Positions 7,939-58,600 of a stretch of DNA of 64,000 bases are shown here, in pieces. The notes beneath the pieces were generated by a model. That model was not told the DNA's origin. It searched no databases and was given only the letters and a program-made list of their open reading frames with translations. Position numbers and translations under genes: made by a program. Position 1 is the first letter of the stretch. Each line of letters opens with the position of its first letter. The stretch is from IMG/VR virus record IMGVR_UViG_3300037116_000299, positions 124,001 to 188,000 of that record; one strand, 5' to 3'.

Positions 7939-8051
7939 TGCTCAATCGAATTCTCTGCTTCTTCGGACTGCATCGCTGGGTCCCGGCCGGTCCTTACATC
8001 GAGACTTGCCGCTGCTGTGGCGCGGTGCAAAACGTCTGGGTCCTCCTGTGA
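7935..8051 (+). CDS. Small Zn-finger-like phage protein (38 aa), not in ORF track
   Basis: ATGA overlap; LCFFGLHRW...TCRCCG (C-x4-H...C-x2-C). Confidence 0.6.
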   Translation: MMLNRILCFFGLHRWVPAGPYIETCRCCGAVQNVWVLL

Positions 8052-38870: not shown

Positions 38871-39940
38871 GCCACTTGGATCTTGGTCTTGAGGACCGCG
38901 ATCCAAGGCTGCATCCATCCCGTATCGCGCGAGTTCCGTTCGATCGCGGCCAGCGTCCTGTCCGCGAGTCCGATCCTTCCGGTTTGAATCGCAGCAAAGG
39001 CAAACTCGTACGGCATTAGGTGCTGGTAGATGGTGGCATCGATGAACAACCGATCTTCCTTCGGATAGGGGAAGTCGTGGCCCCAGACCGAAGCATAGAA
39101 GAATGCCATCCGCGGCTCATCGATCGCCCGGTAATGCTGGACGATTTCATAGATCGGCTCAATGCGCGTCGGCCGATATTGGTAAGCCTTGAGGAATAGG
39201 GGCAGCACGGTCGCCTCCCAATCCTCTCCCAGGCGCATGGCCATCCGGCCCTTCTGATACATGGCGTACCAGCGTTCCTCGTCGAAGCCTTCAAGCAGCA
39301 CGCGTCGCCCATACCAGTATTCGGCGGGCCCATAGTGGCCGAAGTCCTTGTAGGACTGGGCCAGATAGAAGAGGCTCCGCGGATTGGTCGGATCTTCGAT
39401 CACAGCCTTGGTCAACAGGCAGATGTCGCGTTCGAACTTGTCCGTACGCATTGCTCCATCCGCCAGGTGAGTCAGGCTGATGTCGTGGATCTGCTCAAAG
39501 CGCAGCGCCGTCGGCGACGTGATGTATTCGTGGGTGACCCCGACATAGTTCCACTCGTGGCGCGACGACACCAGCATGGTCTGGGTGTAGTCGAGCGACC
39601 CTTCGTAGCGCAACTCATACGCATCCGCGGTCAGCTTTTCCTTGAATGGAGCCCGAACATTCAACACCATGTCCGCATCCATGATCAGCATGTAATCAGT
39701 CTTCGCCCGAGCGAGCCGTACGAGTTGCGTGCGATTGGCCCCGAAATTCACCCATGGGACTTCAATCAGATCCCCCGGCAGGCTCCCCAGTACGTCGAGC
39801 ACGATCGCCTGGGTGCCATCTGTCGACCCTGTGTCGCAAACGATCCAGGAATCGATCCATGGCTTCGCGGACTCTAGGGCGCGCCGAACGACTGCGCTCT
39901 CATTCTTCACCATCATGGCCAGGCAAACAGTTGGTTTCAT
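38867..39940 (-). CDS. Family-2 glycosyltransferase with C-terminal TPR-like region (357 aa)
   Basis: VCLAMMVKNE, IVCDTGSTDGT, WVNFGANR, LIMDAD (DxD), GVTHE; RSLFYLAQSYKD TPR-like helices. Confidence 0.9.
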   Translation of the reverse strand: MKPTVCLAMMVKNESAVVRRALESAKPWIDSWIVCDTGSTDGTQAIVLDVLGSLPGDLIEVPWVNFGANRTQLVRLARAKTDYMLIMDADMVLNVRAPFKEKLTADAYELRYEGSLDYTQTMLVSSRHEWNYVGVTHEYITSPTALRFEQIHDISLTHLADGAMRTDKFERDICLLTKAVIEDPTNPRSLFYLAQSYKDFGHYGPAEYWYGRRVLLEGFDEERWYAMYQKGRMAMRLGEDWEATVLPLFLKAYQYRPTRIEPIYEIVQHYRAIDEPRMAFFYASVWGHDFPYPKEDRLFIDATIYQHLMPYEFAFAAIQTGRIGLADRTLAAIERNSRDTGWMQPWIAVLKTKIQVA

Positions 39941-43030: not shown

Positions 43031-44878
43031 ATGTACAACAATCTGCCTGGGATTCTGGTCAACACCGTTGATGGCGGCCTCGCCGTTCAGCGGCAGCCGG
43101 TGGCCGACTCCACTCTTGTCATCAGCACGTCCGGCCAGGGCGTCGCCAACCAGCCTTACCAGGTTGTCGATCGCACCAAAGCGGCTCTCGAATTCGGACT
43201 GCAGGGCAACCTGATCCGGGGCATGGAAGAGGCTGCATCGAATTCCGACAACCTGATCCTGTTCCGCATGGGTACCGCTCCGATGACCCTCACTGGCATC
43301 GGCGCAGATTCCACCCCGGGCGCTTTGACTGCAGGCTTCGGTTTGGAGTTCGGCCAGGTTCAGGCCACCGCCGCGACCGACTACAAGGTCTGGTACAAGG
43401 CCGGTGTGCTCGCCGTTTACTTCGGCGAGGCTCTGATCTATTCCAACGACCCGCTGCAGACGACCGACAACGGCGACCTCACCATCGACGGCTTGATCGC
43501 CGGCAATGCAGGTCTGCAGATCGGTACCGGAGCCAGCGCGACCCTCGCCAATGCCATCACGGTTCAGGCCGCAGCGGCTCTGGCAGGCGTAGCCCATCAG
43601 GCGGCTCCGACGCTGACCGCGTGCGTAACCGGCCTCGGCCTCACCGGCCGCCAGCAGTTCGTCGCCTTGCTCAAGGCGCTCGACTTGCTCCAGGGCTTCC
43701 AGGTCAAACAGATTGTGGTTCCGGAGGCGCTCTTCAATGCGCCGAACGTGGCCTTCTATGTCGCAGGCGACGCTACCACGTCCCTCAACAACCCGGTCAC
43801 CAACCCGAGTGCGCTCGACTGGCTCAAAACCTCAGCCGATGCGTATGGCAACCTCACGTTCCAGTGGGCGTCCGAGACAACGGACTCGAACGGAACAGCG
43901 GTTGCTGCCTTCGCCGGTGTGACCCTTGCGTCGCGCAAGGCCGCGGGCTTCTCCGAAGTCAACTGGGGCTACACCCTCGCCAACTTCTGCGCGTCGGTGA
44001 GCATGCTCGGCAACGAGTGCATTGGCTTCATCGGCACGACTGGCCCTGCTTCCTACAAGCTGGTCGATGTGCGCAAGTGGGTGGGTTACCTGCCCAAGTA
44101 CGACGCCAACGGAGTTGTGACCACGGCCGGTGCAGGCCTGCTCGGCATCGCCTACACGGCGGGCACGGACACCGCGCATCTGAATCCCCTGTGTGTCGAC
44201 TTTGCTTCCGGTTCGCGCAAGCCTGGCTTCTTCCAGACGGCGAGCGGACAGTACGATGATGCCGCGGAACAGGACATCAACCAGAATCCGATCGACATCG
44301 GCGCCTACCTGCATGTGGTTGCAGACCAGGCCATTCTTTCGAATGGCTTTGCCACCAACTATGTCAGCAACATCGCGACGTTCGTTGCCGGTATCTGCGG
44401 CATGCTCGACGAGAAGCGCGCACTGACCAACCTGTCGGTCTCCGGCATTCAGCAGCTGCCGGGCCTGACCTACACACCCGGCCAGCTCGATGCGCTCACC
44501 CAGGTCAACATCAACGTGCTCAAGACCAAGACCACCGGTCCGGCGCTGTTGCATGACAAGACCTGCGCCACCGATGCCAGCGACTACACCCAGGTGCTGC
44601 GCGTCCGCATCAAGGGCCTGGTGGTTGCCACCATGCTTGCGATCGGCGACCCCTTCGTGGGAGCCAGCTCGCTCGACGGTCTCCAGCTCACCTCGCTGAA
44701 GACGGCGTTGGACACCGGACTCTCCGAACTGTCCAAGCGTGGCTACATCAACAGCCCCAGCGTGGTCATCAAGACCACAGCGGCTGAACAGCGCATCGGT
44801 CACGCCGACCTGTTCCTGAAGTTCCACCCGGCCGACCAGATGGTGCAGCTCAACGCCTATGTGGGCCTGACCCGCTAA
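43031..44878 (+). CDS. Contractile tail sheath protein (615 aa)
   Basis: MYNNLPGILVNTVDGGL start; C-terminal QLDALTQVNINVL...YTQVLRVRIKGLVV...IGDPFVG...LKTALD..L..L...G..., LKFHPADQMVQLNAYV. Confidence 0.85.
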   Translation: MYNNLPGILVNTVDGGLAVQRQPVADSTLVISTSGQGVANQPYQVVDRTKAALEFGLQGNLIRGMEEAASNSDNLILFRMGTAPMTLTGIGADSTPGALTAGFGLEFGQVQATAATDYKVWYKAGVLAVYFGEALIYSNDPLQTTDNGDLTIDGLIAGNAGLQIGTGASATLANAITVQAAAALAGVAHQAAPTLTACVTGLGLTGRQQFVALLKALDLLQGFQVKQIVVPEALFNAPNVAFYVAGDATTSLNNPVTNPSALDWLKTSADAYGNLTFQWASETTDSNGTAVAAFAGVTLASRKAAGFSEVNWGYTLANFCASVSMLGNECIGFIGTTGPASYKLVDVRKWVGYLPKYDANGVVTTAGAGLLGIAYTAGTDTAHLNPLCVDFASGSRKPGFFQTASGQYDDAAEQDINQNPIDIGAYLHVVADQAILSNGFATNYVSNIATFVAGICGMLDEKRALTNLSVSGIQQLPGLTYTPGQLDALTQVNINVLKTKTTGPALLHDKTCATDASDYTQVLRVRIKGLVVATMLAIGDPFVGASSLDGLQLTSLKTALDTGLSELSKRGYINSPSVVIKTTAAEQRIGHADLFLKFHPADQMVQLNAYVGLTR

Positions 44879-44987: not shown

Positions 44988-45686
44988 ATGTCCAGTGCTC
45001 TCGGCGGTGTACTCGCCAGCGAAATCAGCCGTTCCTACAATTCGTTCGCAGGTTCGGACATCAAGGCGGTAATTGGCCAGTTCCAGTTCGCCGAGCTGCA
45101 GGCGATCAGCTACTCCATCACCCGCGAGAAGGCCCCGGTCTACACCCTGGGCAGCGCCGATGTGCGCGCCTACTCGCGCAACAAGCGCGGCATTGCCGGC
45201 TCCCTCATCTGGATCAACTTCGATCGCCACGCTCTGTTGAATCTCATTCAGCAGGCCGCCGGCACCTTCGTCGCCGATGCAGACGAGATTCGCCCGCAGT
45301 ACACCGACGTGTCCAACGGCTCCGCGGTCTTCCAGTCCTCGGTCATTCGTGACATGGGCCCCTCGATCAGTTCCACGATCAATGCTCTCGATCAGCAGAC
45401 CATCAACACGGTCGGCGCGACCAATGAGCTGGCGACCCCGTGGTATTCGGATCAGATTCTGCCGTTCGATGTAACGCTCGCTGGCGCAAATGAGTACGGC
45501 GCCATGTGTGCGGCCAAGATCTTCGGCCTCGAAATCCTCAACGAGGGTTCCGGGATCTCGATCGACGATGCGGTTACCGAGATGCAGGCGACCTTCGTTG
45601 CCCGTGTGGTCGAACCGATGGCCGCCGTGTCCAGTCCGTTCCAGCCGTCCACCGGCATTGGCGGTTCGGCTCTGACGCGCGCGTAA
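44988..45686 (+). CDS. Tail tube protein (232 aa)
   Basis: After the sheath, AAGGAG RBS; SFAGSDI...ELQAISYSITREKAPVYTLGS..RAYSRNKRGIAGSLIW. Confidence 0.75.
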   Translation: MSSALGGVLASEISRSYNSFAGSDIKAVIGQFQFAELQAISYSITREKAPVYTLGSADVRAYSRNKRGIAGSLIWINFDRHALLNLIQQAAGTFVADADEIRPQYTDVSNGSAVFQSSVIRDMGPSISSTINALDQQTINTVGATNELATPWYSDQILPFDVTLAGANEYGAMCAAKIFGLEILNEGSGISIDDAVTEMQATFVARVVEPMAAVSSPFQPSTGIGGSALTRA

Positions 45687-45775: not shown

Positions 45776-46702
45776 ATGTCCATCTCCTTCCCTACCGTAT
45801 CTCCCGACCAATGCCTGCTTACCTGTGGACTTGAGACGACTTCGTCTCAGGTCACTTCGTTCGTGGCGATGGGTCTGCCTGCGGACGCCGGTCCTACTCC
45901 GGCAGCCAGTGCGCCGGTGCTCGCCCCGCCAACAGCGCAGGACGCCGCGGCGCTCGCGGCTTACACCCCGTCGAAGACCAATACCCTCGACGGAAAGGGA
46001 ACGGTTGTAACGCCGCAGTGGAACCCCGGCGCCGCCGGCGCCTTCGACTATCCCACCGATGCGATCAATCACACTCCGAACCCAGGGCTGACCACGTCAG
46101 GGTCGAACTACGATGACATGACCTACACCGGGTCCGACCTGAAGGTCATGCTCGAGGTTGCAGGCAGCGGAAGCACTCCGGGATCGGTACGGCTGTCCAA
46201 GCGCCTGGCGGAGTTGACCACAATCACCGTCTCGGTCCATCGGGTCAAGTCCCCGGTACCTGCCTGCGGGTACATCAACACCAAGGGCTGGGCGCGCGGG
46301 CGGCGCACGATCGCCGGCACCATGGTCTTCACCAAGTTCCTGCAGGATGTGCTGGCCGAGTTTCTCACCTCCGCCGCCTTCACCTCCGATCTCTCCAAGG
46401 ATTCCCAGTACGTCAAGGTCGATCAGCTCCCGCCCTTCAATCTGACCTTCCTGTTCTCGAACGAGTACGGTCACCAGAGTTACCAGCGCCTGATCGGTGT
46501 TGAGTTCGTCACTTCGGGTGACGTCTACTCCATCCAGGACATGCTGAGCGAACAGACGGTCTCCTACGTCTGTGCCGACTTCACTCCTCTCCTCCCCATC
46601 TCCCAAAACAGTCAGCATGTAGCGGCAGCGTCCAACCCGATCACCGCTGCTCAGCGGACCGTGGCGGACGTGCTCAACGCCGCCGCAACACGGCAGGTCT
46701 AG
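45776..46702 (+). CDS. Tail-tube-like paralogue with N-terminal extension (308 aa)
   Basis: YTGSDL...ELTTITVSVHRVKSPVPACG...GWARGRRTIAGTMVF...DQLPPFNLT...NEYG parallels the tube protein. Confidence 0.7.
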   Translation: MSISFPTVSPDQCLLTCGLETTSSQVTSFVAMGLPADAGPTPAASAPVLAPPTAQDAAALAAYTPSKTNTLDGKGTVVTPQWNPGAAGAFDYPTDAINHTPNPGLTTSGSNYDDMTYTGSDLKVMLEVAGSGSTPGSVRLSKRLAELTTITVSVHRVKSPVPACGYINTKGWARGRRTIAGTMVFTKFLQDVLAEFLTSAAFTSDLSKDSQYVKVDQLPPFNLTFLFSNEYGHQSYQRLIGVEFVTSGDVYSIQDMLSEQTVSYVCADFTPLLPISQNSQHVAAASNPITAAQRTVADVLNAAATRQV

Positions 46703-48233: not shown

Positions 48234-48677
48234 ATGGCAGAACAGACCGCAGACCAGACCGCAGACCAGGGAGCCCCGATCACCCCTTTCGAGTTCCTCC
48301 AGGGTTTCGCCGGCGCGCCCAACCAAGCCGACATTGACAGTCTGAAGGCGCAAGCCCCAGGGGGACGCATCCGCCTCTTCCATTCCACCGACGCCAAGCG
48401 CGTGTACCTGATGCGCGGGATCTCCGCGATCGAACTGGTGCAGGTGCAGAACCTCATCCCCGCAGGCATCCACCCGGACAAACTGTCCGGAGTGATGCAG
48501 ACCACGGTTGCCATCAAATGTTGCGCGTGGACCAGCGAAACCGCCGACCACAAGCTCAGCGATCTGGCATTGCAGGCCGCCGGCGCGGGTCTCACCGGGA
48601 CGCTTCACGAGATCGTCTGCCAGCTCTCCGACTACATGGATCCGGCGACCATCGACCGCTGCAGCGCGGACCTGTAA
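48234..48677 (+). CDS. Putative tail assembly chaperone 1 (147 aa)
   Basis: Position between tube genes and the giant protein; VYLMRGISAIE pattern. Confidence 0.55.
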   Translation: MAEQTADQTADQGAPITPFEFLQGFAGAPNQADIDSLKAQAPGGRIRLFHSTDAKRVYLMRGISAIELVQVQNLIPAGIHPDKLSGVMQTTVAIKCCAWTSETADHKLSDLALQAAGAGLTGTLHEIVCQLSDYMDPATIDRCSADL

Positions 48678-48689: not shown

Positions 48690-49367
48690 GTGCAGGTATT
48701 TAGCGCTCAGTGGGCAAGCGGCCGCTACGCCAAGTGGCGGTCGCTGACCTGGGCAGAGTTCCGGCGGTTCGAAGATCGACTCCGTTACGAAAGCCCGATG
48801 CAGGTGTACGTCGACCTGTACCGGGCTGTCGTGATTCAGGGTCCTCCCTTGGAAGGCGATCCCATCTTCCAGGCCCCCGCGGGTCTGGTCGAGTTCGTCG
48901 CCCATTCGATGCTGGACTCCAATCCGTTCGGCGGCGAGTACACCTCCGTCAAGAACGCGATGGAGCAGAAGCGCACCGAGCTGAAGCAGAACTTCCTCTC
49001 CGCCAGCAAAGCCATCATCGCCGGGATCTTCCGCTACACCTTCGAGGAGATCGAGCAGTGGGATGCCGAGATGTTCTTTGAGCGCCTGGCTGCCGCCGAG
49101 TTTGTCTCCGGCCGCAAGGTAGAACCCGGCAATCCCAATCGCAAGGGCCGCCGCGGCCCCCAGAAGAAAGACTTGACCGCAGCACAGGAGCAAGTTGTCC
49201 AGCGTGTCGCGCAACGCGATCCGCGCATGCCGATGCCGGCCGAGGAATCCAGCTACGACCCCACCGCAAACTCAGAGGACGATCAGCCTCGTATGACCAA
49301 GCGACCCCTGACCCCTGCACAGGAGCAAGTCGCCGATCGGGTCCGCAAACAACGCATGGGAAGGTAG
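48690..49367 (+). CDS. Putative tail assembly chaperone 2 (225 aa)
   Basis: GAGGAGG RBS plus GTG; WRSLTWAEF, YTFEEIEQWDAEMFFERLAAAE; same frame as the upstream gene. Confidence 0.55.
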   Translation: MQVFSAQWASGRYAKWRSLTWAEFRRFEDRLRYESPMQVYVDLYRAVVIQGPPLEGDPIFQAPAGLVEFVAHSMLDSNPFGGEYTSVKNAMEQKRTELKQNFLSASKAIIAGIFRYTFEEIEQWDAEMFFERLAAAEFVSGRKVEPGNPNRKGRRGPQKKDLTAAQEQVVQRVAQRDPRMPMPAEESSYDPTANSEDDQPRMTKRPLTPAQEQVADRVRKQRMGR

Positions 49368-49370
49368 TCC

Positions 49371-52300
49371 GTGCCCAATCCATTCATCGTATTCGATCTC
49401 GAGGCCAGCTCCTTCAACACGGGGCTGGCCAATTCGTTTCTGAATGGAGACGGCCGCGGCGCTGACTTGATTCAGGAGTTCGTCCGCACTAGTTCCGACC
49501 CTTCCCGTCTGCAACAGCATCCCCTCTTCCAAGCTCACCAGCGTTCCCAGATTCTGCAGGTCTACGCAACCGGCGGCGCCTTTCAAGGCGGCGACGAAGG
49601 ATGGGTACGTCCGTTCGACGAGATGCGCCGGTTCAACCGGCCGATCGGGAATTCACTCTACGATGAGAGCGACTTTGCCCTCCGTCATTCCCTGCTCTCG
49701 AAGGCACAGGGAGGCCGCAACTATGAAGCCCAGCGCGTCGAGCAACTGTACCAGGGAATCTCGGACTCGATCCGGTCCCATGGCAAGGCAGTCCTCGGTG
49801 GGCACAACATCGGGTCTTATGACTTGTGGAGGCTCGAGTACGCCACCTATCAGCACGACTCCCTGCGGAATCGCCGCGGGTGGCTGGCGGACCAGGTGCG
49901 CACGGGCCGTCTCATGTTGCGGGACAGCGACGCCGAACTGCTCGGAGCTGCCTCGGCGTTTGCCCGCCAGGATGCAGACTTTGCCGCCCATCACTTGAAG
50001 GGTGCGACCGACGTGGCTTCGGCCAAGTGGGTCTCCGGTCACAACCTGACCAACATCACCGAGGCAATGGGCTATCGCAACACCAATGCCCACAATGCCC
50101 TGGATGACACCCTCGGGAATGTGGCGTTCTTCGGGGACATCGATTCGGGGAAGGCCTTCACGCCGGAATCACTGCGTTCGATCTTCCCCCGCCAGGCTGC
50201 CGCTGCCACGCGCGAAGCCGCGCCGCTCCGGGCTACCGTGGCTGAAGCTGCAACGGAAGCGCGTTCTCTCTTCACCGGCGGAGAGAAGAAGTTCCTCATC
50301 GGCGCCGCCGTCGCCGCCGCCGCCGCCGCCGTAGGCTCTCTGATTGCGCACTCTACCCGCCGCGATCGCCAGACCCAAATCACAGGTCTTGGCGAGACCG
50401 GCATGGGCGCGCAGGGCCGCCACAGACTCACGGACTTCGGCTCTGGCTACCAGGGCCTCTCCACCTCCCCCAATCCCTTCCAGCTCGAGTCTGAGGCCGC
50501 CTACAACCCCCTGGTGCGCGCACTGGGTGTAGGCGTCACCGGCTCTGCGCTCTACGGCGCCCATCGCTACATGCTGGCGACGAGCCCGAACTATGCCAAG
50601 CGCCTCCACGGTGCTGCGCTCAAGTTCGAGCAGTATTCCCCCATGCACCTGGGGCGCACCTTCGCTGCCAGCGAACGGTTCTCGTCCTACCTGCCCAGCA
50701 AGCTGGTATTCACCCGCGGGATGCTGACCAATGACGACGGCACCCTCAATGAGGTGGGCCAGACCTTCGATCGTCAGTTCTCAGCAGCCGGACACAAGTT
50801 TGATTTCCTGAATGAGGTCACCGAAGACAATCCCCTGGTCTTCGAAGGCCGCCGCCGGGCGGGCTCCGGATCCCTGCAACTCCAGGGGCGCGGCATCGAC
50901 ATCGAGACCCGGTTCGTCCCCTCCGAGGGACGTCTGGCGGGAACCGCCGCGCGGCTTGACCAGGCGTTGGTCAACCATCCGATTCGCAGGTCGCAGGCTC
51001 AGAGTTCAGTCAAGCAGGCCTGGGGTGATTTCCAGGCAGTCCGCCGATCCCAGCGAATCTCGAATGCATCTCCCTGGTCTGAAGTCGCTAGTGCTGAAAA
51101 GCTGTATCGGCCTTTCTATACCCAGGGGCATGTCGCCGATCCTGCCGACGAGCTGTTCTCCCAGGCCCGCAATGCATGGACCCGTCTTCGGGTAGAGGGG
51201 CTCGAGGCGACCGAGCGTACCCAGAGACTCTTCGCGGAAGCAGGGTTCGGACTGAAGGCAGGTACCTGGAACAAAGCAGCTCATCTCCCCTTTGTCGGGG
51301 AAGGCGGCATGCTCAACCAGATGCTCACCAAGCGCGTCGCGCCTCTGGTGCTTGCAGCCACTGCGCTGGGCTGGCTGGACTATAAGCTGGGGCATCCAAG
51401 CAACAAGATCGTCGATCTTGGCCTGAAGGCCAATGTCCTGCGCGCCGACCTGACCGATATGGTCCCCGGCGCCCGCGGCGTCACTGACTTCTACGACAAG
51501 GTCACCCCGGGATCGCAGTACGGCCCGTTGGCGTTGCCCCTGGCCGGCGCTTTCTTTGGAGGTGTCTACCACTACGGCAAACTCCTCGGCGGCAAGTACG
51601 CCGATGAGGCAGCCAGGACCCTCGGGGCTCGTATCCTCCCTGAGATGAAGGGCCTGCGCAACTTCACCGCTAAGGGTGGCAAGTTGGTTTCCGTCGAAGG
51701 AGCTTCCGCTATCTGGAAGTCTCTCGGCGCGCCGGGCAAGGGCGCTGCCATCGGCCTGGCTGCCATGGCTCTGTTCGTGCCCGGCATGCTTGGGTCCCGT
51801 AAGAGCGGCGCCGATCTGCGCGACATCTACTCCGGCAGCGAACCGATTCCAATCAGGTCCGGCCGCTGGTGGGAAGTCGGCTCAACACCCTACGAAGGCG
51901 GACGCATCAAGGAGTGGCGTCCCCACTGGAGCGTGCTGCGCAAGAGTCATGCAGAAGACATCTCGCTCTACGGATCCGAGAAGGATAAGTGGAAGCACAA
52001 TCCCATCCTGCATCCGCTGAAGTATGCCCGCGATCCCTACTGGCTTGAGAAGCAGCATTACTACGATCGACCGTACCCGGTTGCGTCCCCGGCGTTCTCC
52101 AATGTTCCCTTGATCGGCCCGCTGCTCGCCGCGACCGTCGGCAAGTTGGTCAAACCGCCTGTGCGCATGCATGAAGAGAACTGGAATGGAGAGGATTACA
52201 CCCTCTACTCAACCCGTCTGGAACCGAAGGGCCCAGGCGCGGTCGCGCCGCCCCGTCCGGAAGACGAGTTCACCCTCAGACATGCCCTCAAGCAGGAAGT

Positions 52301-54401
52301 AGGTATCCTGGCCGAGTACACCGGACTCTACGGATTCATCGCCAGCAGCGCCTACCAGGCCATCTTCCCAGGTGTGAACCAGGGCAAGGACGTCTACTTC
52401 CAGGGCTCCCGTCAGATGGACAATTTCTCCCGCCGCTACTACGAGCGGGAGCTGGGCGCCGGCATCGCGCCGTCTCCCTCGATGAAGGAACACTTCGGAT
52501 ACACCGAGCCCTTCCGCCGATTTGTCCAGCGGGAAGACTTCTCTCCCCAGGCCAACCCACTGCGCAACCAGATGCCTGGCTGGCTGCCCGGAGCCGACTA
52601 CCTCACCAACTTCCAAATCGGCGATCCCTTCACCAAGGTCGACGAGGGCTATGCCCGCCTGCCTGGCGCCGGCTACGAGGCCCTGCATCCAGAGTTGAAG
52701 GGACTCAAGCCCGAAGACTACCCCGACATCAACAAGCTGGCCATCCTGGGTGACGTAGCCCCGTACTCGCGCGAGTACAACATCTTCCGTTCGAAGGTAG
52801 GCGCCGACTCCGCCGACAACACCGAGCTGCGCATCGAGTACGAGAAGATCCTCGACCGCGTCCGGCAGACCAGGGAGTCCGTCATCCGGATGGACGCTCG
52901 TCGCTTCACCGAGCCTGTCGCTGAGCTTGAAGGCACCGTCGAAACGGCGACGCCCGGCGGAGTCACCCTCAAGGAACACCCCGGACAACTCTTCCAGTTC
53001 TCGTCCGTGAGCATGAGTGCCGCCAGCATGTCGGCGAGCATTCTCGGCGAGCACAACAATCTGACCCGCGCGGAAGTTGCCGGACAGGTTGACGAGCGCC
53101 ATCAGAAACTGCAGGACTACCTGGCTGGGATGGTTGGATCCAAAGCCCACCTGACAGTCCCCGATGGAACACTCGGCCGGGCGGAGCGCGCACGAGCCGT
53201 CATCGAAGTCGATGGCAAGAACCTCAACCGGGAACTGATCGACCAGGGTTACGGCCAGTATCAAGAACGCCTGGGCGGAGCTGAAGCGCAGGAGATGTTC
53301 GGCGCCGCCGGCAAGACCATGGGCTCGATCGCTGAGGCCCTCGCCTTCCAGGGCGACTCCGGCCGGCTCAACCCGATGCGCTACATCCCCACACCAGGCC
53401 ACACCAAGGCCTGGCAGGAGCGCACGCCACTCGCCCAGTACATGACCAACGAGGTTGTTGGCACCCGCATGCGGCGGTGGGAACGGCCCATCCATGACTT
53501 CCTCATGCCTTACGCACGAGGCGCCTGGCAGCGGATGAGCGGTAAAGCTCTCATTCCTGAGGATGTACAGGTTCGGCGGGATCTGAACACCCTGGGCGAC
53601 ACCATGCAATATCTCCGCGGACTCAATGCGGAGACCTCGGGGACCTATACTAATAAGAAGCAGAGGACTTCTGTCGGGGCCAACCTGTTTGCCGCGTCGA
53701 CGTTTGTAGCTTCTACCCTTCCCGCCCGCGAATCCCATTACTTCCGCCAGTTCCTCAACGAGACGGATCCCGAGAAGCGGGCCTCGATTCTCGAAGTGGC
53801 TTCGACCGAGATGCAGCGCGCCCTTTCCGCGCAGTGGGTCGCTCAGGAAGCTCGCATTCAGGTAGCCAACGGCGAAGACCCTGGCCCGATCGGCGAAGGC
53901 GGCCGGCTCTACACCCAGGCCAACGTCGAGGACTACAAGAAAACCGACACCAGTCTGGACTACGGCAATTGGTTGCGATCCAAGGAGATCGCCGACTTCT
54001 TCTCCCGCACCGGGTTTGCTCTTCCCGAACAAGGATCAGCTGCATACGACGAAGCTTTGGATTATGAGGACGTCAAGCTGAAACTGATTCAACAGGAAGG
54101 GTACGACTCCCATGACTTCAACATCTTCGATGACCGGGCAGCCATGCTGTGGCGCAAGCCGTATGTGGATGGCGCTGTCCGCGAACTCACCAGTGGTGAC
54201 GATCGTTCCCCAGAACAGTTGCGGCGGGCGGTCGAACAGCTGATGACAGCCTCACACGACGCAAGATCGGATGTTCGAACTGCGGTACACGCAAGCCACA
54301 CGAATCGCGCGAGCATTCGAGTGGATGTATCTGTCGACGAGAGCGACGCACTGGTGAGAGACATTCGCCGCAACCCCGACAAGTATGCGCAGGAGACGTA
54401 A
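49371..54401 (+). CDS. Giant tape-measure-position protein with N-terminal DEDDh 3'-5' exonuclease and a degenerate SNase-like OB domain (1676 aa)
   Basis: Follows the chaperones; ExoI FDLE (D9/E11), ExoII HNIGSYD (D151), ExoIII HNALDD (H241/D246); hydrophobic Ala/Gly helices; TLGRAERARAVIEVDGKNLNRELIDQGYG near 53160-53260. Confidence 0.75.
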   Translation: MPNPFIVFDLEASSFNTGLANSFLNGDGRGADLIQEFVRTSSDPSRLQQHPLFQAHQRSQILQVYATGGAFQGGDEGWVRPFDEMRRFNRPIGNSLYDESDFALRHSLLSKAQGGRNYEAQRVEQLYQGISDSIRSHGKAVLGGHNIGSYDLWRLEYATYQHDSLRNRRGWLADQVRTGRLMLRDSDAELLGAASAFARQDADFAAHHLKGATDVASAKWVSGHNLTNITEAMGYRNTNAHNALDDTLGNVAFFGDIDSGKAFTPESLRSIFPRQAAAATREAAPLRATVAEAATEARSLFTGGEKKFLIGAAVAAAAAAVGSLIAHSTRRDRQTQITGLGETGMGAQGRHRLTDFGSGYQGLSTSPNPFQLESEAAYNPLVRALGVGVTGSALYGAHRYMLATSPNYAKRLHGAALKFEQYSPMHLGRTFAASERFSSYLPSKLVFTRGMLTNDDGTLNEVGQTFDRQFSAAGHKFDFLNEVTEDNPLVFEGRRRAGSGSLQLQGRGIDIETRFVPSEGRLAGTAARLDQALVNHPIRRSQAQSSVKQAWGDFQAVRRSQRISNASPWSEVASAEKLYRPFYTQGHVADPADELFSQARNAWTRLRVEGLEATERTQRLFAEAGFGLKAGTWNKAAHLPFVGEGGMLNQMLTKRVAPLVLAATALGWLDYKLGHPSNKIVDLGLKANVLRADLTDMVPGARGVTDFYDKVTPGSQYGPLALPLAGAFFGGVYHYGKLLGGKYADEAARTLGARILPEMKGLRNFTAKGGKLVSVEGASAIWKSLGAPGKGAAIGLAAMALFVPGMLGSRKSGADLRDIYSGSEPIPIRSGRWWEVGSTPYEGGRIKEWRPHWSVLRKSHAEDISLYGSEKDKWKHNPILHPLKYARDPYWLEKQHYYDRPYPVASPAFSNVPLIGPLLAATVGKLVKPPVRMHEENWNGEDYTLYSTRLEPKGPGAVAPPRPEDEFTLRHALKQEVGILAEYTGLYGFIASSAYQAIFPGVNQGKDVYFQGSRQMDNFSRRYYERELGAGIAPSPSMKEHFGYTEPFRRFVQREDFSPQANPLRNQMPGWLPGADYLTNFQIGDPFTKVDEGYARLPGAGYEALHPELKGLKPEDYPDINKLAILGDVAPYSREYNIFRSKVGADSADNTELRIEYEKILDRVRQTRESVIRMDARRFTEPVAELEGTVETATPGGVTLKEHPGQLFQFSSVSMSAASMSASILGEHNNLTRAEVAGQVDERHQKLQDYLAGMVGSKAHLTVPDGTLGRAERARAVIEVDGKNLNRELIDQGYGQYQERLGGAEAQEMFGAAGKTMGSIAEALAFQGDSGRLNPMRYIPTPGHTKAWQERTPLAQYMTNEVVGTRMRRWERPIHDFLMPYARGAWQRMSGKALIPEDVQVRRDLNTLGDTMQYLRGLNAETSGTYTNKKQRTSVGANLFAASTFVASTLPARESHYFRQFLNETDPEKRASILEVASTEMQRALSAQWVAQEARIQVANGEDPGPIGEGGRLYTQANVEDYKKTDTSLDYGNWLRSKEIADFFSRTGFALPEQGSAAYDEALDYEDVKLKLIQQEGYDSHDFNIFDDRAAMLWRKPYVDGAVRELTSGDDRSPEQLRRAVEQLMTASHDARSDVRTAVHASHTNRASIRVDVSVDESDALVRDIRRNPDKYAQET

Positions 54402-55471
54402 TGCAACCGCACAGCATCACCCTTGACCCCGAGCTGCACAGCGTTGATATCCGCGAGATTGAACGTCGCCTGAAAGAAAGGGTGGCTGGTCAAGATCCGG
54501 CCATTTCACAGTTGGTGGGCTTGCTCGAAACCTACTTTGCCGGCTACAACGACCCTAATGCTCCTGTGGGCGTGGTGCTTGCCCTGGGCCCGTCCGGGAC
54601 CGGCAAGACCAGTCTGATCGAAGCTCTGTGCGAGATACTCTACGACAACCCCAAGGCGCATGTTCGGATGAACTGCGCGGACTTCAAGGAGTCCCAACAG
54701 ACCCAGCGGATTGTCGGAGCGCCTCCGGGCTACATCGGTTTCAAGGACAAGTCGATCGAGACGTATTTGACCCAGGAGAATCTGGACCGCCATCACACGG
54801 CGAAGATGAAGCTCAGCGTCGTCCTGCTGGACGAGATCGAGGAAGCTCATAGCGCCCTCTATGACTACCTGCTGGCCGTATTCAATGACGGCGAAGGCAT
54901 GGTCAGCGGCAAGCTGGTCAACTTCCGCAACACCCTGTTTGTCATGACCTCGAACCTGGGGACCTCCACGAAGTCCAGCCTGCTTGGCTTTACGGCCGAC
55001 CAGGTCGCCGCCCATAACCACCAGAACGAAGCATCGATCCGCAAGGCAGTGCAGGAGCATTTCAAGTTCAAGTTCCTGAACCGCATCGACGAAACCATGA
55101 TCTTCGAGGCGCTGTCCAAAGAGACCATCGACCTGATCTTCGACATGCAGGTGTGCCAGATCCGCCGCAGGCTTCTGATCTCGAAGCAACCCGGTCCGCA
55201 GTACGTGTTCAAGATCCAGGACGATGCCCGCCAGGAGCTGGTCCGCCGCGGCTTTGACATCAAGTTTGGAGCCCGTCCCCTGAAGCGTGTCCTCCGCCGG
55301 GTCATTACCGACAAGCTGGCGGCTCTGATGCGCAGCGGCCAGGTGGAACACGGCGACCTGGTGGTGATCGATTACACCGGCATTCGCTTCATCTACGAGA
55401 AATACAACGGTGACGAAATCGGCCAGCTCTCGGACCCGCAATGGGCCGAGTTCAGCAGGATCATCGACTAG
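54401..55471 (+). CDS. Stand-alone ClpB/ClpC second-ring (D2)-type AAA+ ATPase (356 aa)
   Basis: RVAGQDPAI, GPSGTGKT, pore loop GAPPGYIGF, VLLDEIEEAH, FRNTLFVMTSNLG, FLNRIDE, FGARPLKR; no N-domain or D1. Confidence 0.92.
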   Translation: MQPHSITLDPELHSVDIREIERRLKERVAGQDPAISQLVGLLETYFAGYNDPNAPVGVVLALGPSGTGKTSLIEALCEILYDNPKAHVRMNCADFKESQQTQRIVGAPPGYIGFKDKSIETYLTQENLDRHHTAKMKLSVVLLDEIEEAHSALYDYLLAVFNDGEGMVSGKLVNFRNTLFVMTSNLGTSTKSSLLGFTADQVAAHNHQNEASIRKAVQEHFKFKFLNRIDETMIFEALSKETIDLIFDMQVCQIRRRLLISKQPGPQYVFKIQDDARQELVRRGFDIKFGARPLKRVLRRVITDKLAALMRSGQVEHGDLVVIDYTGIRFIYEKYNGDEIGQLSDPQWAEFSRIID

Positions 55472-55629: not shown

Positions 55630-58600
55630 ATGCCAAATCCCCTCCCATCGATGACCCGAACCGCCCTCAACTCCCTCAATGAGGGTGTTGACGGCGTGCG
55701 TGCATGGGCGAATCTCAGCCTGCTGCACTCCAGGGTGGGTATGGGAGCGGGCATTGCCATGCTGGCAGCTCCGTTGTTCCTGAAGAATGACGAGCGCGGT
55801 TACTTCCAGACGGCTGCGATGACCACTCCCTTGATCGCCGCCGGCGCCATGGTAGCGCCGCGGCTGTTCCCGACGCTGCAGCGCGAAGGTAAACGCCTCA
55901 TCGACGTGGTCAAGCAGGTTCCTACCGACTACGGCTTTCAGAGCGGGGTCTACAACGCCGAGAGCGGCGCAATGAACCTATCCGAACTGCGCCAGGCCTT
56001 CGAAGGCGGACGCATCTCCTCCGCGGATTACAACCGAGGTTTGCTGCGCTATCACGGTGACATTGCCGCCAGCGTGATCAGTCCCGACGAGATCGACCGG
56101 CAGTTCCTGTCGGCATCCCGCACCTTCTCCGAACTGTACAAAGATCCCACCAAGCACCGCATGCTCGAGAACGCGCTGTACCGCGCGACGCTGAGCCAGG
56201 AAAGCGCCGGCGAGAAAGCTGCCTGGAACGACCTGACGGCGGTTGCACCAAAGATGTCGCTCAATGAGATCGACGACCTGTTCGACGCCTACTCCAAGAA
56301 CCCGGACTGGCTGAAACAGGTCAACTACCGAATGCAGGAAGCCCGCAAGGCAACTACATCCGGCGCCACCATTCCCTCAATCGACACCCTGGTCGATGCG
56401 AATGCCGAGTACGTGCACTCTTACAGCCTGGATACAGATCAGGGCATGGCGATGCTCAAGAACTCGCCGTTCCAGGATGAGATGAGCGAGATCGAGACCC
56501 TGCTCGGCACTCAGGGTGCGGGCTGGAAACGATCTGACTTCGAACTGCAGGTTCTGCCTGATCGCAACCAGGCAGTCAACCGCATCCAGGGCCTGATGGT
56601 TCGGGGCGAGCTGTCGATTCCTTTTGCTGATGCGGACGGCGGCGTGCGCCTGGGCAGCCGGTTCGACCGGCACGGGGCCTCCCGCTTCTTCATCACCCAC
56701 AACGACCGGCTCTCCTCCCAGGTCTATGCCCTGCGCGGGCTGCAGAGCGGCCCCGCCGCCATGCCGAGTGTGGCCGAGGAGCTGGCGCGCGCTCAGTTCA
56801 ACATTCAGGGCGATGCAGGTGCATTGCGCAACCAGAAGTTCTTCTTTGGCAAGCAGGGTGTCATGGGCAATCTGCCGAACTCATTTCCCACCGAACGAGG
56901 CGCAAAGGGATTTGCCGATCTTCGTCCGGAAGAGATGATGGCCGCGATCAAACATCAGACCGAGGGGCCGGATGGCCTGGTCCGGATGTCAGGCGGTACG
57001 GGTCTGGACATCTATGAAGATCGCTCACTGCGGTTGATCGAGCCCCAGGGCGTGCACTCGCGTGAGGCGGAGAGTCTGCGCGGCAAGGCCGTCAACAAGG
57101 GCGTCTCCGCCTGGGTAGCTCCCGGCCATGAAGGCTTCTCCGCCACCAACGCCGTGGATCTTCCTGAGTTTGCGATGCGGACCTACCAGGTGTCGGGCAG
57201 CCAGCATGCCTTCTTCAGCGAGATGCCGGAATGGAAGGCGATCGAGAACGACGTCAACCAGCAGTTCGGTTATATGGAAGCTGCCGGTTTCGGAGGCAGC
57301 TCCGCCCTGGAAGAAGAGGCACGACAACTGTCTGTCGATGTCGCCTTGAGCAAGATTGGCGCTCGGGAACGCATGATCACCTTCATGGCAGGAGATGCGG
57401 GTGTTGGTATGGAAGCAGCCGAGGCCATGTACACCAAGTTCCTGCCATTCCTGGCCAATCCCAAGAACTACGAGGCCATGCGATCGCTCTCCTATCTGGG
57501 AGATGGATCCAGAATCATGGGCAACAGCATCGGCGCTGGCTTCACCCAGACCCGCTCGGTGCGCCTGCACGAGAGCCTGCTCACCGAAGGCATGCTGAAC
57601 GGGGAGACCATTCCCGAAGGCACGCCACTGGGCTTCGAGTACGGCAACGCCGTGTTCCCCAACGGGGAGCGCAACAAGATCGTCTCGCACTCGAGCACCT
57701 TCAACGAAGACGGGTCAATGACCTTCCAGATCGAAGAGAACCTGGGCAGCCAAGGCCTGAAGACGCACGGCTACACCAAGCAGACGACTGTGCTCGGGCT
57801 CAACGACCTGACCCTGGACCGCGTGCGCCGCGGTACGAATGCGTGGCATCAGGCGACCGGCAGCGGTGGTGTGGTCGATGAGCGAGTAGCCGCCTTCACC
57901 CTGGAGGGTTCCAACTCGGCCAAGGCCAAGAACCCCCTCTCCATCATGGAGAACATGCTGGGCGCCACGCTGGGCGATGTCCAGCAGGCAAACGGTGAGC
58001 TGCCCGACTTTCTCAATGCCGGCCTCAAGCAGCTGTCGCCCTACGGCTATTCGTTTGAGAACGGCGGACTGCTCAGCGACTCGTCGAAGTTCCTGAGCAT
58101 GGAGCATGCTCCTGCGAACTACACCGCTGTGGCCGAGATTATGCACGGCTTGATGGAACAGACCGGCGCGGCCATCAAGGCCGAGCAAATCAAGCTGGAC
58201 GCATCCATGCGCGGCTACATTGACTGGTCCATGAAGAACTCCAACGGGTCTTATACCGACTACAAGACCCGCTTCGGCATGCCCGAATCTCTCAGCGTAT
58301 CCGATCACATGGCCCTGAACCACGCCGGTGAGGTTCGGATCACGCGCGACGCACTGCAGCAGTTGAACATTATGGGCTACCACGAGGTTGCCAAAGAGAT
58401 CAACGACCGCCTGCAGACCGACGGACTCCCGAGTATGACCCAGGACTTCCTCAAGCACATCGAGAAGGACGGCCAGGACTTCTCCGGTCAGTTTGGTGAT
58501 ACCACCGTTTCGCTCGCTGATGCAATGGGAGGTTCCGACCTGCGCCTGGGCACCGCCGCTGGGCGCTCGGGTACGATCTTCGACCCAAAGAATCCGCTTG

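What the first reader, a model, noticed from the sequence alone, without database searches (positions are those of the whole stretch)
49371..50150. Intact DEDDh 3'-5' exonuclease at the N-terminus of the tape-measure-position protein
Seen: D9-x-E11, HNxxxYD151 and H241-x4-D246 are all present at the start of the 1676-aa protein that directly follows the tail chaperones. Established: tape measures are ejected and often carry muralytic domains, but a proofreading-type exonuclease is not a usual cargo. Inference: an ejected nuclease delivered with the virion RNAP. It could resect genome ends to expose single-stranded promoter DNA (N4 and crAss-like vRNAPs prefer ssDNA templates), degrade signalling oligonucleotides, or trim host nucleic acid.
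Basis: partly seen in the sequence, partly recalled or inferred. Interest (0 to 1): 0.8.

Follow-up and report, generated by a model that had tools for sequence, protein, structure and literature searches.

The report
Exonuclease domain on jumbo-phage tail protein
A giant virion protein of a peat-soil jumbo phage starts with an intact proofreading-type (DEDDh) 3'-5' exonuclease followed by a membrane anchor. The exonuclease is an optional add-on, and relatives carry other nucleases on the same protein, so these phages probably deliver a nuclease with their DNA.

Summary
ORF 49371..54401 (1676 aa) begins with D9-x-E11, H145-N146-x3-Y-D151 and H241-x4-D246. A 44-sequence profile of this domain hits RNase T at E=4e-8. 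The AlphaFold model (pLDDT 92) matches only DEDDh exonucleases at the top of the PDB and viral fold searches. The catalytic residues are kept in 41-44 of 44 homologues.

The context needs correcting. The protein is the homologue of Bacillus phage 0305phi8-36 gp145, a virion protein found by mass spectrometry. Its gene lies between the tail chaperonins and the gene annotated as tape measure (here 55630..60579).

The exonuclease, a transmembrane helix and a conserved DRQTQITGL...TDFGSG[WY] motif form an optional N-terminal module. The module is absent from all four isolated relatives examined and from about two thirds of metagenomic ones, and it was gained or lost at least 10 times. Other family members carry a Vsr-like endonuclease or a staphylococcal-nuclease insert, sometimes together with the exonuclease.

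The best reading is a tail-borne, membrane-inserting protein that delivers a degradative nuclease at infection. Ejection, substrate and the link to a virion RNA polymerase are untested. Close relatives that keep the DxDGD protein lack the exonuclease. Novelty: a new variant of known enzyme cargo on tail-lumen proteins.

The parts
49371..54401 (+). Whole gene: 1676-aa homologue of the 0305phi8-36 gp145 family, carrying an N-terminal exonuclease module
   Evidence: ORF found. The body has more than 216 homologues. tblastn hits virion structural proteins of 0305phi8-36 (ORF145), ME3, WH1, Edson and MTATph1.
49371..50186 (+). DEDDh 3'-5' exonuclease domain (residues 1-272)
   Evidence: Profile hit to RNase T at E=4e-8. 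AF2 model with pLDDT 92. Foldseek top hits are DEDDh enzymes.
49395..49403 (+). Exo I motif, D9-L-E11
   Evidence: D kept in 44/44 homologues, E in 43/44.
49803..49823 (+). Exo II motif, H145-N146-I-G-S-Y150-D151
   Evidence: N kept in 41/44, D in 43/44. Position 145 is W in 40 of 44 homologues and H here.
50091..50108 (+). Exo III motif, H241-N-A-L-D-D246 (the 'h' histidine and the fourth acidic residue)
   Evidence: H kept in 41/44, A243 in 41/44, D246 in 42/44. It aligns to H-x-A-x-x-D of RNase T.
50289..50354 (+). Transmembrane-type helix 1 (residues 307-328)
   Evidence: Hydropathy peak of 2.23. A hydrophobic helix sits at this place in all long-class homologues.
50358..50459 (+). Conserved linker motif RRDRQTQITGL...RHxxTDFGSGYQG (residues 330-363); a possible processing or docking site
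   Evidence: Present in nearly all exonuclease-bearing homologues and twice in P0006. It occurs only once in the window. It is retained in P0113, which has lost the exonuclease core.
50511..50561 (+). Second hydrophobic helix (residues 381-397). It is the N-proximal helix of the exonuclease-less homologues
   Evidence: N-termini of short-class proteins and of the isolates' gp145 homologues.
50460..54398 (+). Conserved gp145-family body (residues 364-1676)
   Evidence: 50-68% identity to more than 100 metagenomic proteins. 19-39% identity over aligned segments (many between 24% and 39%) to gp145 of the isolated jumbo phages.
52890..53318 (+). Possible degenerate staphylococcal-nuclease/OB-like domain inside the body (residues 1174-1316)
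   Evidence: Profile A5 hits thermonuclease chains at E=0.008-0.06. Pfam SNase is not detected. This is weak evidence.
48234..48677 (+). First gene in the tail-chaperonin position (147 aa)
   Evidence: Assigned by position only. It has orthologues in L003 and L005 but no detectable similarity to gp143.
48690..49367 (+). Second gene in the tail-chaperonin position (225 aa)
   Evidence: Weak match to 0305phi8-36 gp144 (E=0.009), plus synteny.
54401..55471 (+). ClpB-D2-like AAA+ ATPase between the gp145-like gene and the tape-measure-position gene
   Evidence: PF07724 at E=1e-28 and PF10431 at E=2e-15. It holds the same position in L003, L004 and L005.
55630..60579 (+). Giant protein in the tape-measure position (the slot of gp146), with an invariant RHPINA...DxDGD block; a candidate fused RNA polymerase
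   Evidence: Weak atlas leads to RdRP and Rpb1_2. No PDB sequence hit.
60583..64000 (+). Start of a hub-like giant protein with a lytic-transglycosylase-type motif; it runs off the window
   Evidence: open frame; translation. The L003 orthologue carries PF01464 SLT. It occupies the position of gp147, the hub protein of 0305phi8-36.

Best explanation
The 1676-aa ORF is the counterpart of gp145 of 0305phi8-36-like jumbo myophages. gp145 is a virion protein encoded between the tail chaperonins and the tape-measure-position gene. To a conserved body of about 1300 aa, which begins with a hydrophobic helix, this phage lineage adds an optional N-terminal module. The module consists of a catalytically competent DEDDh (RNase T / oligoribonuclease / DnaQ-like) 3'-5' exonuclease, a transmembrane helix and a conserved DRQTQITGL...TDFGSG[WY] motif. 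The most likely mechanism has four steps. First, the protein is kept soluble by the upstream chaperonins. Second, it is built into the tail interior next to the tape-measure-position protein. Third, it is expelled on sheath contraction. Fourth, it inserts into the host membrane by its hydrophobic hairpin and places a metal-dependent 3'-5' exonuclease at the DNA entry site. There the enzyme degrades nucleic acid from free 3' ends. The target would be host or competing DNA or RNA, not the phage's own promoters. In sister lineages it would be assisted by the Vsr-like or staphylococcal-nuclease endonuclease inserts in the same protein. Shown here: the domain identity, the conserved active site, family membership and synteny, the optional nature of the module, and the recurrent nuclease accretion. 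Taken from the 0305phi8-36 record: virion location of the family. Inferred: tail-lumen location, ejection, membrane insertion, substrate and biological purpose. Rough sub-probabilities: active exonuclease 0.9; carried in the virion 0.65; delivered to the host 0.55; degradative role 0.35.
For: Domain identity rests. Family membership and synteny (tube, tube paralogue, gp142 homologue, two chaperonin-position genes, gp145 homologue, giant gene, hub) rest. GenBank notes on the 0305phi8-36 record say gp145 was identified as a virion protein by mass spectrometry. Hydrophobic helices lie near the N-terminus of every family member examined, including the four isolates. The module is optional: 77 of 118 homologues lack it, there is no separate upstream exonuclease gene in L003, L004 or L005, and at least 10 changes are forced on the body tree. 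Relics of the module in P0113, P0104 and P0015 point to loss. The nuclease theme is recurrent: a PF04480/PF18741 PD-(D/E)xK endonuclease is inserted at query residues 955-958 in about 20 homologues, and a PF00565 SNase is inserted near residue 1520 in two. Exonuclease-plus-endonuclease combinations occur in P0093, P0109, P0121 and P0122. An SNase domain on the hub protein of the related BtI1 element was already noted in PMC2147016. Precedent for a nucleic-acid enzyme fused to a tape-measure protein and delivered at infection: P23-45 gp96 (PMC10770324). A whole-library phmmer search with the domain found it only in this protein family, in P0006 and in short fragments. No standalone copies were found (for the search; for the hit sequences).
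Against: There is no direct evidence that this protein, or its N-terminal module, is in the virion or is ejected. None of the four isolated relatives examined carries the module, so no proteomic data cover it. The conserved motif after the first helix could be a cleavage site that removes the exonuclease before assembly. A folded 30-kDa domain may not fit a tail-tube lumen. The substrate is unknown. The nearest folds include oligoribonuclease, which acts on 2-5-mers, not on DNA ends. Pfam RNase_T is not reached by any single sequence. A few homologues have substitutions at catalytic positions (P0073, P0119, P0122).
Confidence: 0.5

Rival explanations
1. The exonuclease enters together with a virion RNA polymerase and resects the incoming genome end, exposing single-stranded promoter DNA for that polymerase.
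For: The neighbouring 1649-aa protein has an invariant RHPINA...DxDGDxxSxH block that resembles the beta' catalytic double-psi barrel. There are weak atlas leads to RdRP and Rpb1_2. A tape-measure-fused virion RNAP exists in P23-45 (PMC10770324). By analogy with tape-measure proteins, an N-terminal domain would lie next to the DNA end (inference).
Against: Relatives L003 and L005 keep the DxDGD protein but have no exonuclease module and no separate upstream exonuclease gene. The module changed state at least 10 times. The other nucleases on this protein family (SNase, Vsr-like) are not suited to controlled resection. The RNAP identity is itself unproven: there is no PDB profile hit. The YonO-like RNAP reported for 0305phi8-36 is a different gene (ABS83659.1, whereas gp146 is ABS83704.1).
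Confidence: 0.08
2. Processing of the phage's own genome ends. The delivered exonuclease chews the 3' ends of the long terminal repeats, so that complementary 5' tails anneal. The genome then circularises or concatemerises quickly and escapes RecBCD-type attack.
For: 0305phi8-36 has genes in a terminal repeat (figure legend in PMC2147016). 3'-5' resection of direct terminal repeats would expose complementary strands (established biochemistry; inference here).
Against: The module is dispensable in most relatives, which have the same virion module. Terminal repeats of this genome were not examined. Co-occurring endonuclease domains would endanger the phage's own DNA.
Confidence: 0.1
3. Producer-cell or post-entry membrane nuclease. 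The N-terminal module is cleaved at the conserved motif and stays in the cell membrane. There it degrades DNA of superinfecting phages or host DNA. It is not a working part of the virion.
For: The motif is better conserved than the exonuclease itself and flanks the domain on both sides in P0006. The upstream neighbour of P0006 is a Prok-JAB peptidase gene. A papain-like peptidase gene follows the closest exonuclease-bearing homologue (L001). Host membrane nucleases can cut DNA at the injection site (SNIPE, bioRxiv 10.1101/2025.11.03.685801).
Against: No cleavage has been shown. No peptidase gene adjoins the gene in this window, where the neighbour is an AAA+ ATPase instead. Fusion to a virion protein would be an odd way to make a cell-membrane enzyme.
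Confidence: 0.15
4. Anti-defence nuclease. It would degrade short signalling or priming oligonucleotides (oligoribonuclease-like activity) or defence RNAs immediately on entry.
For: The best PDB fold matches are oligoribonucleases. RNase T is the best sequence match.
Against: Cyclic-oligonucleotide signals lack free 3' ends, so a DEDDh exonuclease is an unlikely degrader of them (prior knowledge, not tested here). Sister proteins carry DNA endonucleases. Membrane tethering is an odd arrangement for a scavenger of diffusible signals.
Confidence: 0.07
5. Structural or inactivated domain with no catalytic role, or an externally exposed enzyme that degrades extracellular matrix DNA.
For: No activity data exist. 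A few homologues have substituted catalytic residues. An SNase domain on the hub protein of BtI1 would be compatible with an external role.
Against: The catalytic residues are the most conserved positions of the domain. The transmembrane hairpin and the position next to the chaperonins argue for an internal, membrane-inserting protein.
Confidence: 0.05

Closest known systems
RNase T, oligoribonuclease and the DnaQ epsilon domain (DEDDh branch of the DnaQ-like, RNase H-fold exonucleases)
   Same: Exo I (DxE), Exo II (Nx3[FY]D) and Exo III (Hx4D, with HxAxxD spacing) are present in order. The beta1-beta2-beta3-alphaA-beta4-alphaB-beta5-alphaC core is present. The profile E-value to RNase T is 4e-8.
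   Different: About 280 aa against 180-215 aa, with about 130 residues between Exo I and Exo II. It falls below the Pfam RNase_T threshold. An invariant extra glutamate (E119) is present. It is fused to a transmembrane helix and a 1300-aa virion protein. Activity and oligomeric state are unknown.
Bacillus phage 0305phi8-36 gp145 (ORF145, virion structural protein), and its homologues in Acinetobacter phage ME3 (gp035), Bacillus phage WH1 (gp096) and Moorella phage MTATph1
   Same: Homologous body. Same gene order: sheath, tube, tube paralogue, gp142, two chaperonins, gp145, giant gene, hub. An N-proximal hydrophobic helix.
   Different: The isolates have no exonuclease domain and no DRQTQITGL motif. 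Their N-terminal regions are unrelated and longer. No function has been assigned to gp145 in the literature I could search.
Thermus phage P23-45 gp96, a tape-measure protein with an N-terminal virion RNA polymerase (PMC10770324)
   Same: A nucleic-acid enzyme sits at the N-terminus of a giant tail-interior protein and is presumably delivered with the DNA.
   Different: The enzyme class differs (two-barrel RNAP against DEDDh exonuclease). P23-45 is a siphovirus and this phage is a myovirus. There is no sequence relation. Activity and virion presence were shown there and were not shown here.
Staphylococcal-nuclease domain on the hub protein of the 0305phi8-36 relative BtI1 (Hardies et al. 2007, PMC2147016)
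   Same: A nuclease domain decorates a tail-tip or tail-interior protein in the same phage lineage. Its purpose was called 'not obvious' in that paper.
   Different: The carrier protein differs (hub, gp147 position) and the nuclease fold differs.
Muralytic cargo on tape-measure and ejection proteins (T5 pb2, T7 gp16, phiKZ gp181, mycobacteriophage tape-measure motifs; recalled from general knowledge)
   Same: An enzyme domain is carried on an expelled, membrane-active tail or core protein.
   Different: Those domains attack peptidoglycan. In this window that function sits on the hub-like protein that starts at 60583.
SNIPE, a host membrane-bound nuclease that cuts phage DNA during injection (bioRxiv 10.1101/2025.11.03.685801)
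   Same: A membrane-anchored nuclease acts at the site of genome entry and is associated with tape-measure proteins.
   Different: SNIPE is encoded by the host as a defence. It has a different fold and no homology was tested.

Membership tests
DEDDh 3'-5' exonucleases (DnaQ-like; RNase T / Orn / epsilon) | Exo I motif D-x-E at the end of the first beta strand | tested here: met
   D9-L-E11 follows strand 5-12 of the model. D is kept in 44/44 homologues and E in 43/44.
DEDDh 3'-5' exonucleases (DnaQ-like; RNase T / Orn / epsilon) | Exo II motif N-x2-3-[FY]-D at the start of the helix after strand 4 | tested here: met
   N146-IGS-Y150-D151 follows strand 140-144. N is kept in 41/44 and D in 43/44. 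It aligns to HNxxFD of RNase T.
DEDDh 3'-5' exonucleases (DnaQ-like; RNase T / Orn / epsilon) | Exo III motif H-x4-D (the histidine subtype, as opposed to Y-x3-D) | tested here: met
   H241-NALD-D246. H is kept in 41/44 and D in 42/44. It aligns to HSA(R/L)YD of RNase T.
DEDDh 3'-5' exonucleases (DnaQ-like; RNase T / Orn / epsilon) | RNase H-like alpha/beta fold | tested here: met
   AF2 model with pLDDT 92 and pTM 0.90. The top 13 PDB hits and the top viral hits are all DEDDh or DnaQ, with probability up to 1.0 and TM to target up to 0.65. The E-values are modest (1.5e-2 against PDB, 5e-4 against the viral library), probably because of large insertions relative to the ~200-aa targets (inference).
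DEDDh 3'-5' exonucleases (DnaQ-like; RNase T / Orn / epsilon) | Significant sequence similarity to curated family models | tested here: inconclusive
   The profile of 44 sequences hits RNase T chains at E=4e-8. Pfam PF00929 is not hit by the window sequence or by six homologues scanned singly.
DEDDh 3'-5' exonucleases (DnaQ-like; RNase T / Orn / epsilon) | Divalent-metal-dependent 3'-5' exonuclease activity | not testable with these tools
   Needs an enzyme assay.
0305phi8-36 gp145 virion-protein family | Homology of the ~1300-aa body | tested here: met
   tblastn E=1e-19 to 1e-30 to the isolates. Collinear blastp segments. 216 metagenomic homologues.
0305phi8-36 gp145 virion-protein family | Position between the two-gene tail chaperonin and the giant tape-measure-position gene, upstream of the hub | tested here: met
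0305phi8-36 gp145 virion-protein family | Presence in purified virions | not testable with these tools
   Known only for 0305phi8-36 gp145, from the mass-spectrometry note in its record.
Tail tape-measure protein | Gene immediately downstream of the tail assembly chaperones | tested here: met
   The start codon lies 4 nt after the stop of the second chaperonin-position gene.
Tail tape-measure protein | Homology to a protein assigned as tape measure | tested here: not met
   No tape-measure PHROG or Pfam hit. The homologue in 0305phi8-36 is gp145, whereas gp146 holds the tape-measure assignment.
Tail tape-measure protein | Length proportional to tail length; extended, mostly helical structure | not tested
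By eye the body sequence is rich in W, P, G and Y and does not look like coiled coil.

The most novel reading that the evidence does not exclude
0305phi8-36-like jumbo phages use the gp145 protein as a delivery vehicle for interchangeable nuclease warheads: DEDDh exonuclease, Vsr-like PD-(D/E)xK endonuclease and staphylococcal nuclease. The protein is shot out of the tail and anchored in the host membrane at the entry pore. There the nucleases destroy host or rival DNA from the first seconds of infection. This would be a phage-borne mirror image of host membrane nucleases such as SNIPE, and possibly a virion-delivered superinfection-exclusion or host-shutoff weapon. The conserved DRQTQITGL...TDFGSG[WY] element would be the release or docking signal.
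Probability: 0.2. Interest if true: 0.8.

Novelty: new variant of a known kind. Interest (0 to 1): 0.58.

Why it matters
Enzymes carried on tail-interior proteins are the first phage activities to reach the host. Known cargo is mostly muralytic, with one virion RNA polymerase (P23-45). A conserved, catalytically intact exonuclease, swapped or combined with two other nuclease types on the same virion protein in a large and mostly uncultured jumbo-phage lineage, would add nucleases to that cargo list. It would also give gp145, unassigned in the literature I could search, a testable function. It bears on how jumbo phages take over or protect the entry site. It corrects the assumption that the first giant gene after the chaperones is the tape measure. 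The neighbouring DxDGD protein suggests that this tail module may deliver several nucleic-acid enzymes.

Tried and rejected
- Single-sequence searches of residues 1-300 against Pfam, PHROGs and PDB sequences gave nothing. Scanning seven homologues singly against Pfam gave no RNase_T hit.
- blastn of the gene against 50,697 phage records found no match.
- The word-indexed homologue search restricted to residues 1-300 found only 2 proteins, and whole-library phmmer found only 6. The family became visible only when I searched with the body.
- The first AF2 model, built on 7 sequences, was mediocre (pLDDT 72.6). Its fold hits were right in kind but weak, and it was superseded.
- The tape-measure identity of this ORF was rejected on homology and on the published assignment.
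- A separately encoded exonuclease immediately upstream in exonuclease-less relatives was rejected for L003, L004 and L005. Other places in those genomes were not searched.
- An assembly chimera at the exonuclease-to-body junction was rejected. More than 40 homologues have the same fusion, and a contig in an independent run spans 49037-51600 with no differences.
- The test for the gp143/gp144-type shared paralogous domain between the two chaperonin-position genes was negative.
- A Pfam SNase domain in the body of eight family members was found only in the known insert of P0122.
- The profile of the DxDGD region against PDB gave no hits. The language-model atlas search on the body was uninformative.
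- I considered that the YonO-like RNAP reported for 0305phi8-36 might be gp146. The accession numbers differ, so it is not.
Full report
**1. The observation**

The window holds an uninterrupted ORF at 49371..54401 on the + strand. It has a GTG start, with a GGAAGG 8 nt upstream, and encodes 1676 aa. In shuffles of residues 1-280, the ordered triple DxE / Nx3[FY]D / Hx4D appears about once in a thousand (204 of 200,000). The motifs alone are therefore a hint and not a proof.

**2. Is it a DEDDh exonuclease?**

- **Single-sequence searches failed.** Pfam, PHROGs and PDB sequences gave nothing.
- **Few homologues of the domain alone.** A word-indexed search found two. An exhaustive phmmer search of 1.84 billion representatives found six: short fragments, P0008 (a 634-aa low-complexity repeat protein that I judged spurious from its sequence) and large proteins.
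- **The body search opened the family.** Searching with the body of the protein gave 216 hits. About 45 of the 120 listed hits carry the same N-terminal domain.
- **Catalytic residues are conserved.** An alignment of 44 such domains has 18-55% identity to the window. D9 is invariant, and E11, N146, D151, H241, A243 and D246 are each kept in at least 41 of 44. The six catalytic or motif residues are among the nine least variable of 280 positions. An extra glutamate, E119, is invariant; its role is unknown.
- **Sequence profile.** The profile hits RNase T chains at E=4.3e-8, 6e-7 and 9e-7, with the three Exo motifs aligned in order.
- **Structure.** AlphaFold2 on this alignment gives pLDDT 92.0 and pTM 0.90. 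The strand and helix order is that expected of the DnaQ fold.
- **Fold searches.** Against the PDB, oligoribonuclease, RNase T, a DnaQ domain and CRN-4 take the first 13 places, with probability up to 1.00 and TM to target 0.55-0.58. Against the viral library, the top hits are proteins named DEDDh or DnaQ, with E=5e-4 to 2e-3 and TM to target up to 0.65.

I conclude that residues 1 to about 272 are a divergent, insertion-rich DEDDh exonuclease whose active site is under selection. Activity itself cannot be shown with these tools.

**3. What protein carries it?**

The window is part of a tailed-phage structural region. It holds a terminase, portal and major capsid protein and a tail sheath at 43031..44878 (PHROG 16991, E=2e-36).

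tblastn with the body hits "virion structural protein" genes of five jumbo myophages of 177-235 kb. These are Bacillus phages 0305phi8-36 (ORF145), WH1 and Edson, Acinetobacter phage ME3, and Moorella phage MTATph1.

Gene order was read in the four annotated isolates (0305phi8-36, ME3, MTATph1, WH1) and matches the window throughout. It runs sheath, tube, tube paralogue, gp142, two chaperonin-position genes, gp145 homologue, a second giant gene, and hub. The window's genes match the tube (E=1e-33), the tube paralogue and gp142, and weakly match gp144.

The 0305phi8-36 record states that gp145 was found in virions by mass spectrometry. Hardies et al. assign the tape-measure role to the next gene, orf146, on the basis of tail length. 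[quoted passage not shown]

The gene does follow the chaperonins, but its homologue is gp145. The tape-measure candidate here is 55630..60579. No function for gp145 is given in the paper I could read.

**4. Anatomy of the protein**

- **Residues 273-306:** a linker after the exonuclease.
- **Residues 307-328:** a strongly hydrophobic helix.
- **Residues 330-363:** a motif, RRDRQTQITGL...RHxxTDFGSGYQG.
- **Residues 381-397:** a second hydrophobic helix, followed by the conserved body.

The motif is kept almost letter for letter in exonuclease-bearing homologues whose exonuclease domains share only 20-30% identity. It occurs twice in P0006, flanking the exonuclease domain there. It occurs nowhere else in the window.

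Exonuclease-less homologues begin just after this motif, at the second helix. The four isolates start with an unrelated short segment followed by a hydrophobic helix.

Inside the body, residues 1174-1316 give weak profile hits to staphylococcal thermonuclease (E about 0.01). The catalytic residues are not evident and there is no Pfam support. I treat this only as a lead.

**5. The module is optional, and nucleases recur**

- **Absence in most relatives.** Of 118 homologues with a complete N-terminus, 41 have the exonuclease and 77 do not.
- **Repeated change.** On a tree of a body segment that avoids the insertion sites, at least 12 changes of state are needed and at least 10 are forced by well-supported branches. 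Shuffled labels need 34.
- **The window's nearest relatives are mixed.** P0011, P0010, P0012 and P0016 lack the module, while P0001 has it.
- **No separate upstream gene.** In the exonuclease-less relatives L003, L004 and L005, the chaperonin-position gene ends about 20 nt before the gene start, so there is no upstream exonuclease gene.
- **Relics argue for loss.** P0113 keeps the transmembrane helix and motif (E=1e-9) and a collinear remnant of the first strand with DxE. P0104 and P0015 keep fragments of the motif.
- **Other nucleases on the same family.** About 20 members have a PF04480/PF18741 (Vsr-like, PD-(D/E)xK) endonuclease inserted at query residues 955-958. Two have a PF00565 staphylococcal nuclease inserted near residue 1520. 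P0093 and P0109 combine the exonuclease with the Vsr-like domain, and P0121 and P0122 combine it with SNase.
- **An older observation in the same lineage.** Hardies et al. had already noticed an SNase domain on the hub protein of the related element BtI1 and could not explain it.

Three unrelated nuclease folds on one virion protein family make a nucleolytic role the common denominator.

**6. Mechanism**

*Shown here:* the domain identity, the conserved active site, the family and synteny, the optional nature of the module, and the recurrent nuclease decoration.

*Taken from a database record:* virion location of the family.

*Inferred:* the protein lies in the tail interior, is expelled at contraction, inserts into the host membrane, and exposes the nuclease to nucleic acid. 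Four observations support this. Hydrophobic helices lie in a virion protein encoded next to the chaperonins. The neighbours are a giant tape-measure-position protein and a muralytic hub. P23-45 provides a precedent, because its tape-measure protein carries an N-terminal RNA polymerase shown to be in virions (PMC10770324). Muralytic tape-measure cargo in general is a further precedent (prior knowledge).

I favour a degradative role at the entry site, acting on host or competing nucleic acid. The pairing of an exonuclease with non-specific or nicking endonucleases in sister proteins is the logic of degradation, not of fine end-processing. I hold this part at about 0.35.

**7.

The 1649-aa neighbour has a block, RHPINA...(27 aa)...GDTDGDRMSAH, that is invariant in seven homologues at 27-47% identity. 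It resembles the beta' catalytic motif NADFDGDQMAVH. A language-model search gives weak leads to RdRP and Rpb1 domain 2. A profile search of PDB sequences finds nothing.

It is a credible candidate for a tape-measure-position RNA polymerase, but this is unproven. The YonO-like RNAP that Iyer et al. report in 0305phi8-36 is another gene.

More importantly, L003 and L005 keep this protein with its DxDGD motif and have no exonuclease module. Any polymerase function therefore does not depend on the exonuclease.

**8. Other rivals**

- Resection of terminal repeats for circularisation.
- Cleavage at the conserved motif, leaving a free membrane nuclease. This is hinted at by a JAB peptidase gene next to P0006 and a papain-like peptidase gene after P0001.
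- Degradation of short oligonucleotides.
- A non-catalytic domain.

None of these is excluded. The last is unlikely, given the conservation of the active site.

**9. Source and reality of the sequence**

The stretch occurs at 0.87-1.00 word share in at least 16 peat or permafrost runs, including one metatranscriptome library at 0.87; four further RNA libraries hold 0.06-0.24 of the words. One contig in an independent run spans 49037-51600 with no differences, and no indels or joints were seen. Presence in an RNA library is not proof of transcription.

**10. Novelty**

I found no paper describing an exonuclease on a tape-measure-region protein or any function for gp145. The principle of enzyme cargo on expelled tail proteins is known. 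I therefore rate this a new variant of a known kind, of moderate to good interest.

Noticed in passing
window 55630..60579 (motif at about 59050..59190; DTDGD at 59146..59160): The giant protein in the tape-measure position has an invariant RHPINA...DxDGDxxSxH block across seven homologues at 27-47% identity. The block resembles the beta' catalytic double-psi-barrel motif. It is a candidate tape-measure-fused two-barrel RNA polymerase, like P23-45 gp96. The protein also has N- and C-terminal hydrophobic helices.
   Followed up: partly
window 54401..55471: A ClpB-D2-like AAA+ ATPase (PF07724, PF10431) lies between the gp145-like gene and the tape-measure-position gene. It holds the same place in L003, L004 and L005. 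It is absent there in 0305phi8-36 and ME3, and is replaced by a papain-like peptidase gene in L001. It could be an unfoldase that loads the giant proteins into the tail.
   Followed up: partly
window 50289..50459; P0006 residues 70-125 and 395-450: A transmembrane helix plus the DRQTQITGL...TDFGSG[WY] motif form a module that is conserved more strongly than the exonuclease domain. It is duplicated around the exonuclease domain in P0006, whose upstream neighbour is a Prok-JAB peptidase gene (L010 3460..3897). It may be a processing site.
   Followed up: partly
window 52890..53318: The body segment at residues 1174-1316 gives weak profile hits (E about 0.01) to staphylococcal thermonuclease over its C-terminal two thirds. 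The catalytic residues are not evident. It may be a degenerate SNase/OB nucleic-acid-binding domain common to the whole gp145 family.
   Followed up: partly
homologues P0021, P0024, P0050 and others (insert at query residues 955-958); P0121 and P0122 (insert near query residue 1520): In-frame inserts of a Vsr-like PD-(D/E)xK endonuclease (PF04480 + PF18741) or a staphylococcal nuclease (PF00565) occur in the same virion protein family, sometimes together with the N-terminal exonuclease.
   Followed up: yes
window 44988..45686 and 45776..46702: These are the tail tube and its paralogue (E=1e-33 and 7e-18 to 0305phi8-36 gp140 and gp141). The PHROG label 'major head protein' for the second one repeats a product-field error in the 0305phi8-36 record, whose own note says 'tail tube'.
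   Followed up: yes
window 60583..64000 (runs off the end): A hub-like giant ORF of more than 1139 aa has a lytic-transglycosylase-type E-S...GLFQ motif. Its orthologues carry SLT (L003) or glucosaminidase (L005). This is the position of gp147, the T4 gp27-like hub of 0305phi8-36.
   Followed up: partly
window 8006..8941, 13995..15374 and 38867..39940 (- strand): Other weak domain hits: an MmcB-like PD-(D/E)xK protein, a calcineurin-like phosphoesterase just under threshold, and a family-2 glycosyltransferase on the opposite strand inside the structural region.
   Followed up: no
whole window: The sequence comes from peat and permafrost metagenomes, and at least 16 runs hold this stretch. Relatives sit on contigs of 200-230 kb, and one on a 406-kb contig. 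Two homologues are binned as 'archaeon' and 'Candidatus Acidiferrales bacterium', which is probably MAG mis-binning or a hint at the host.
   Followed up: no
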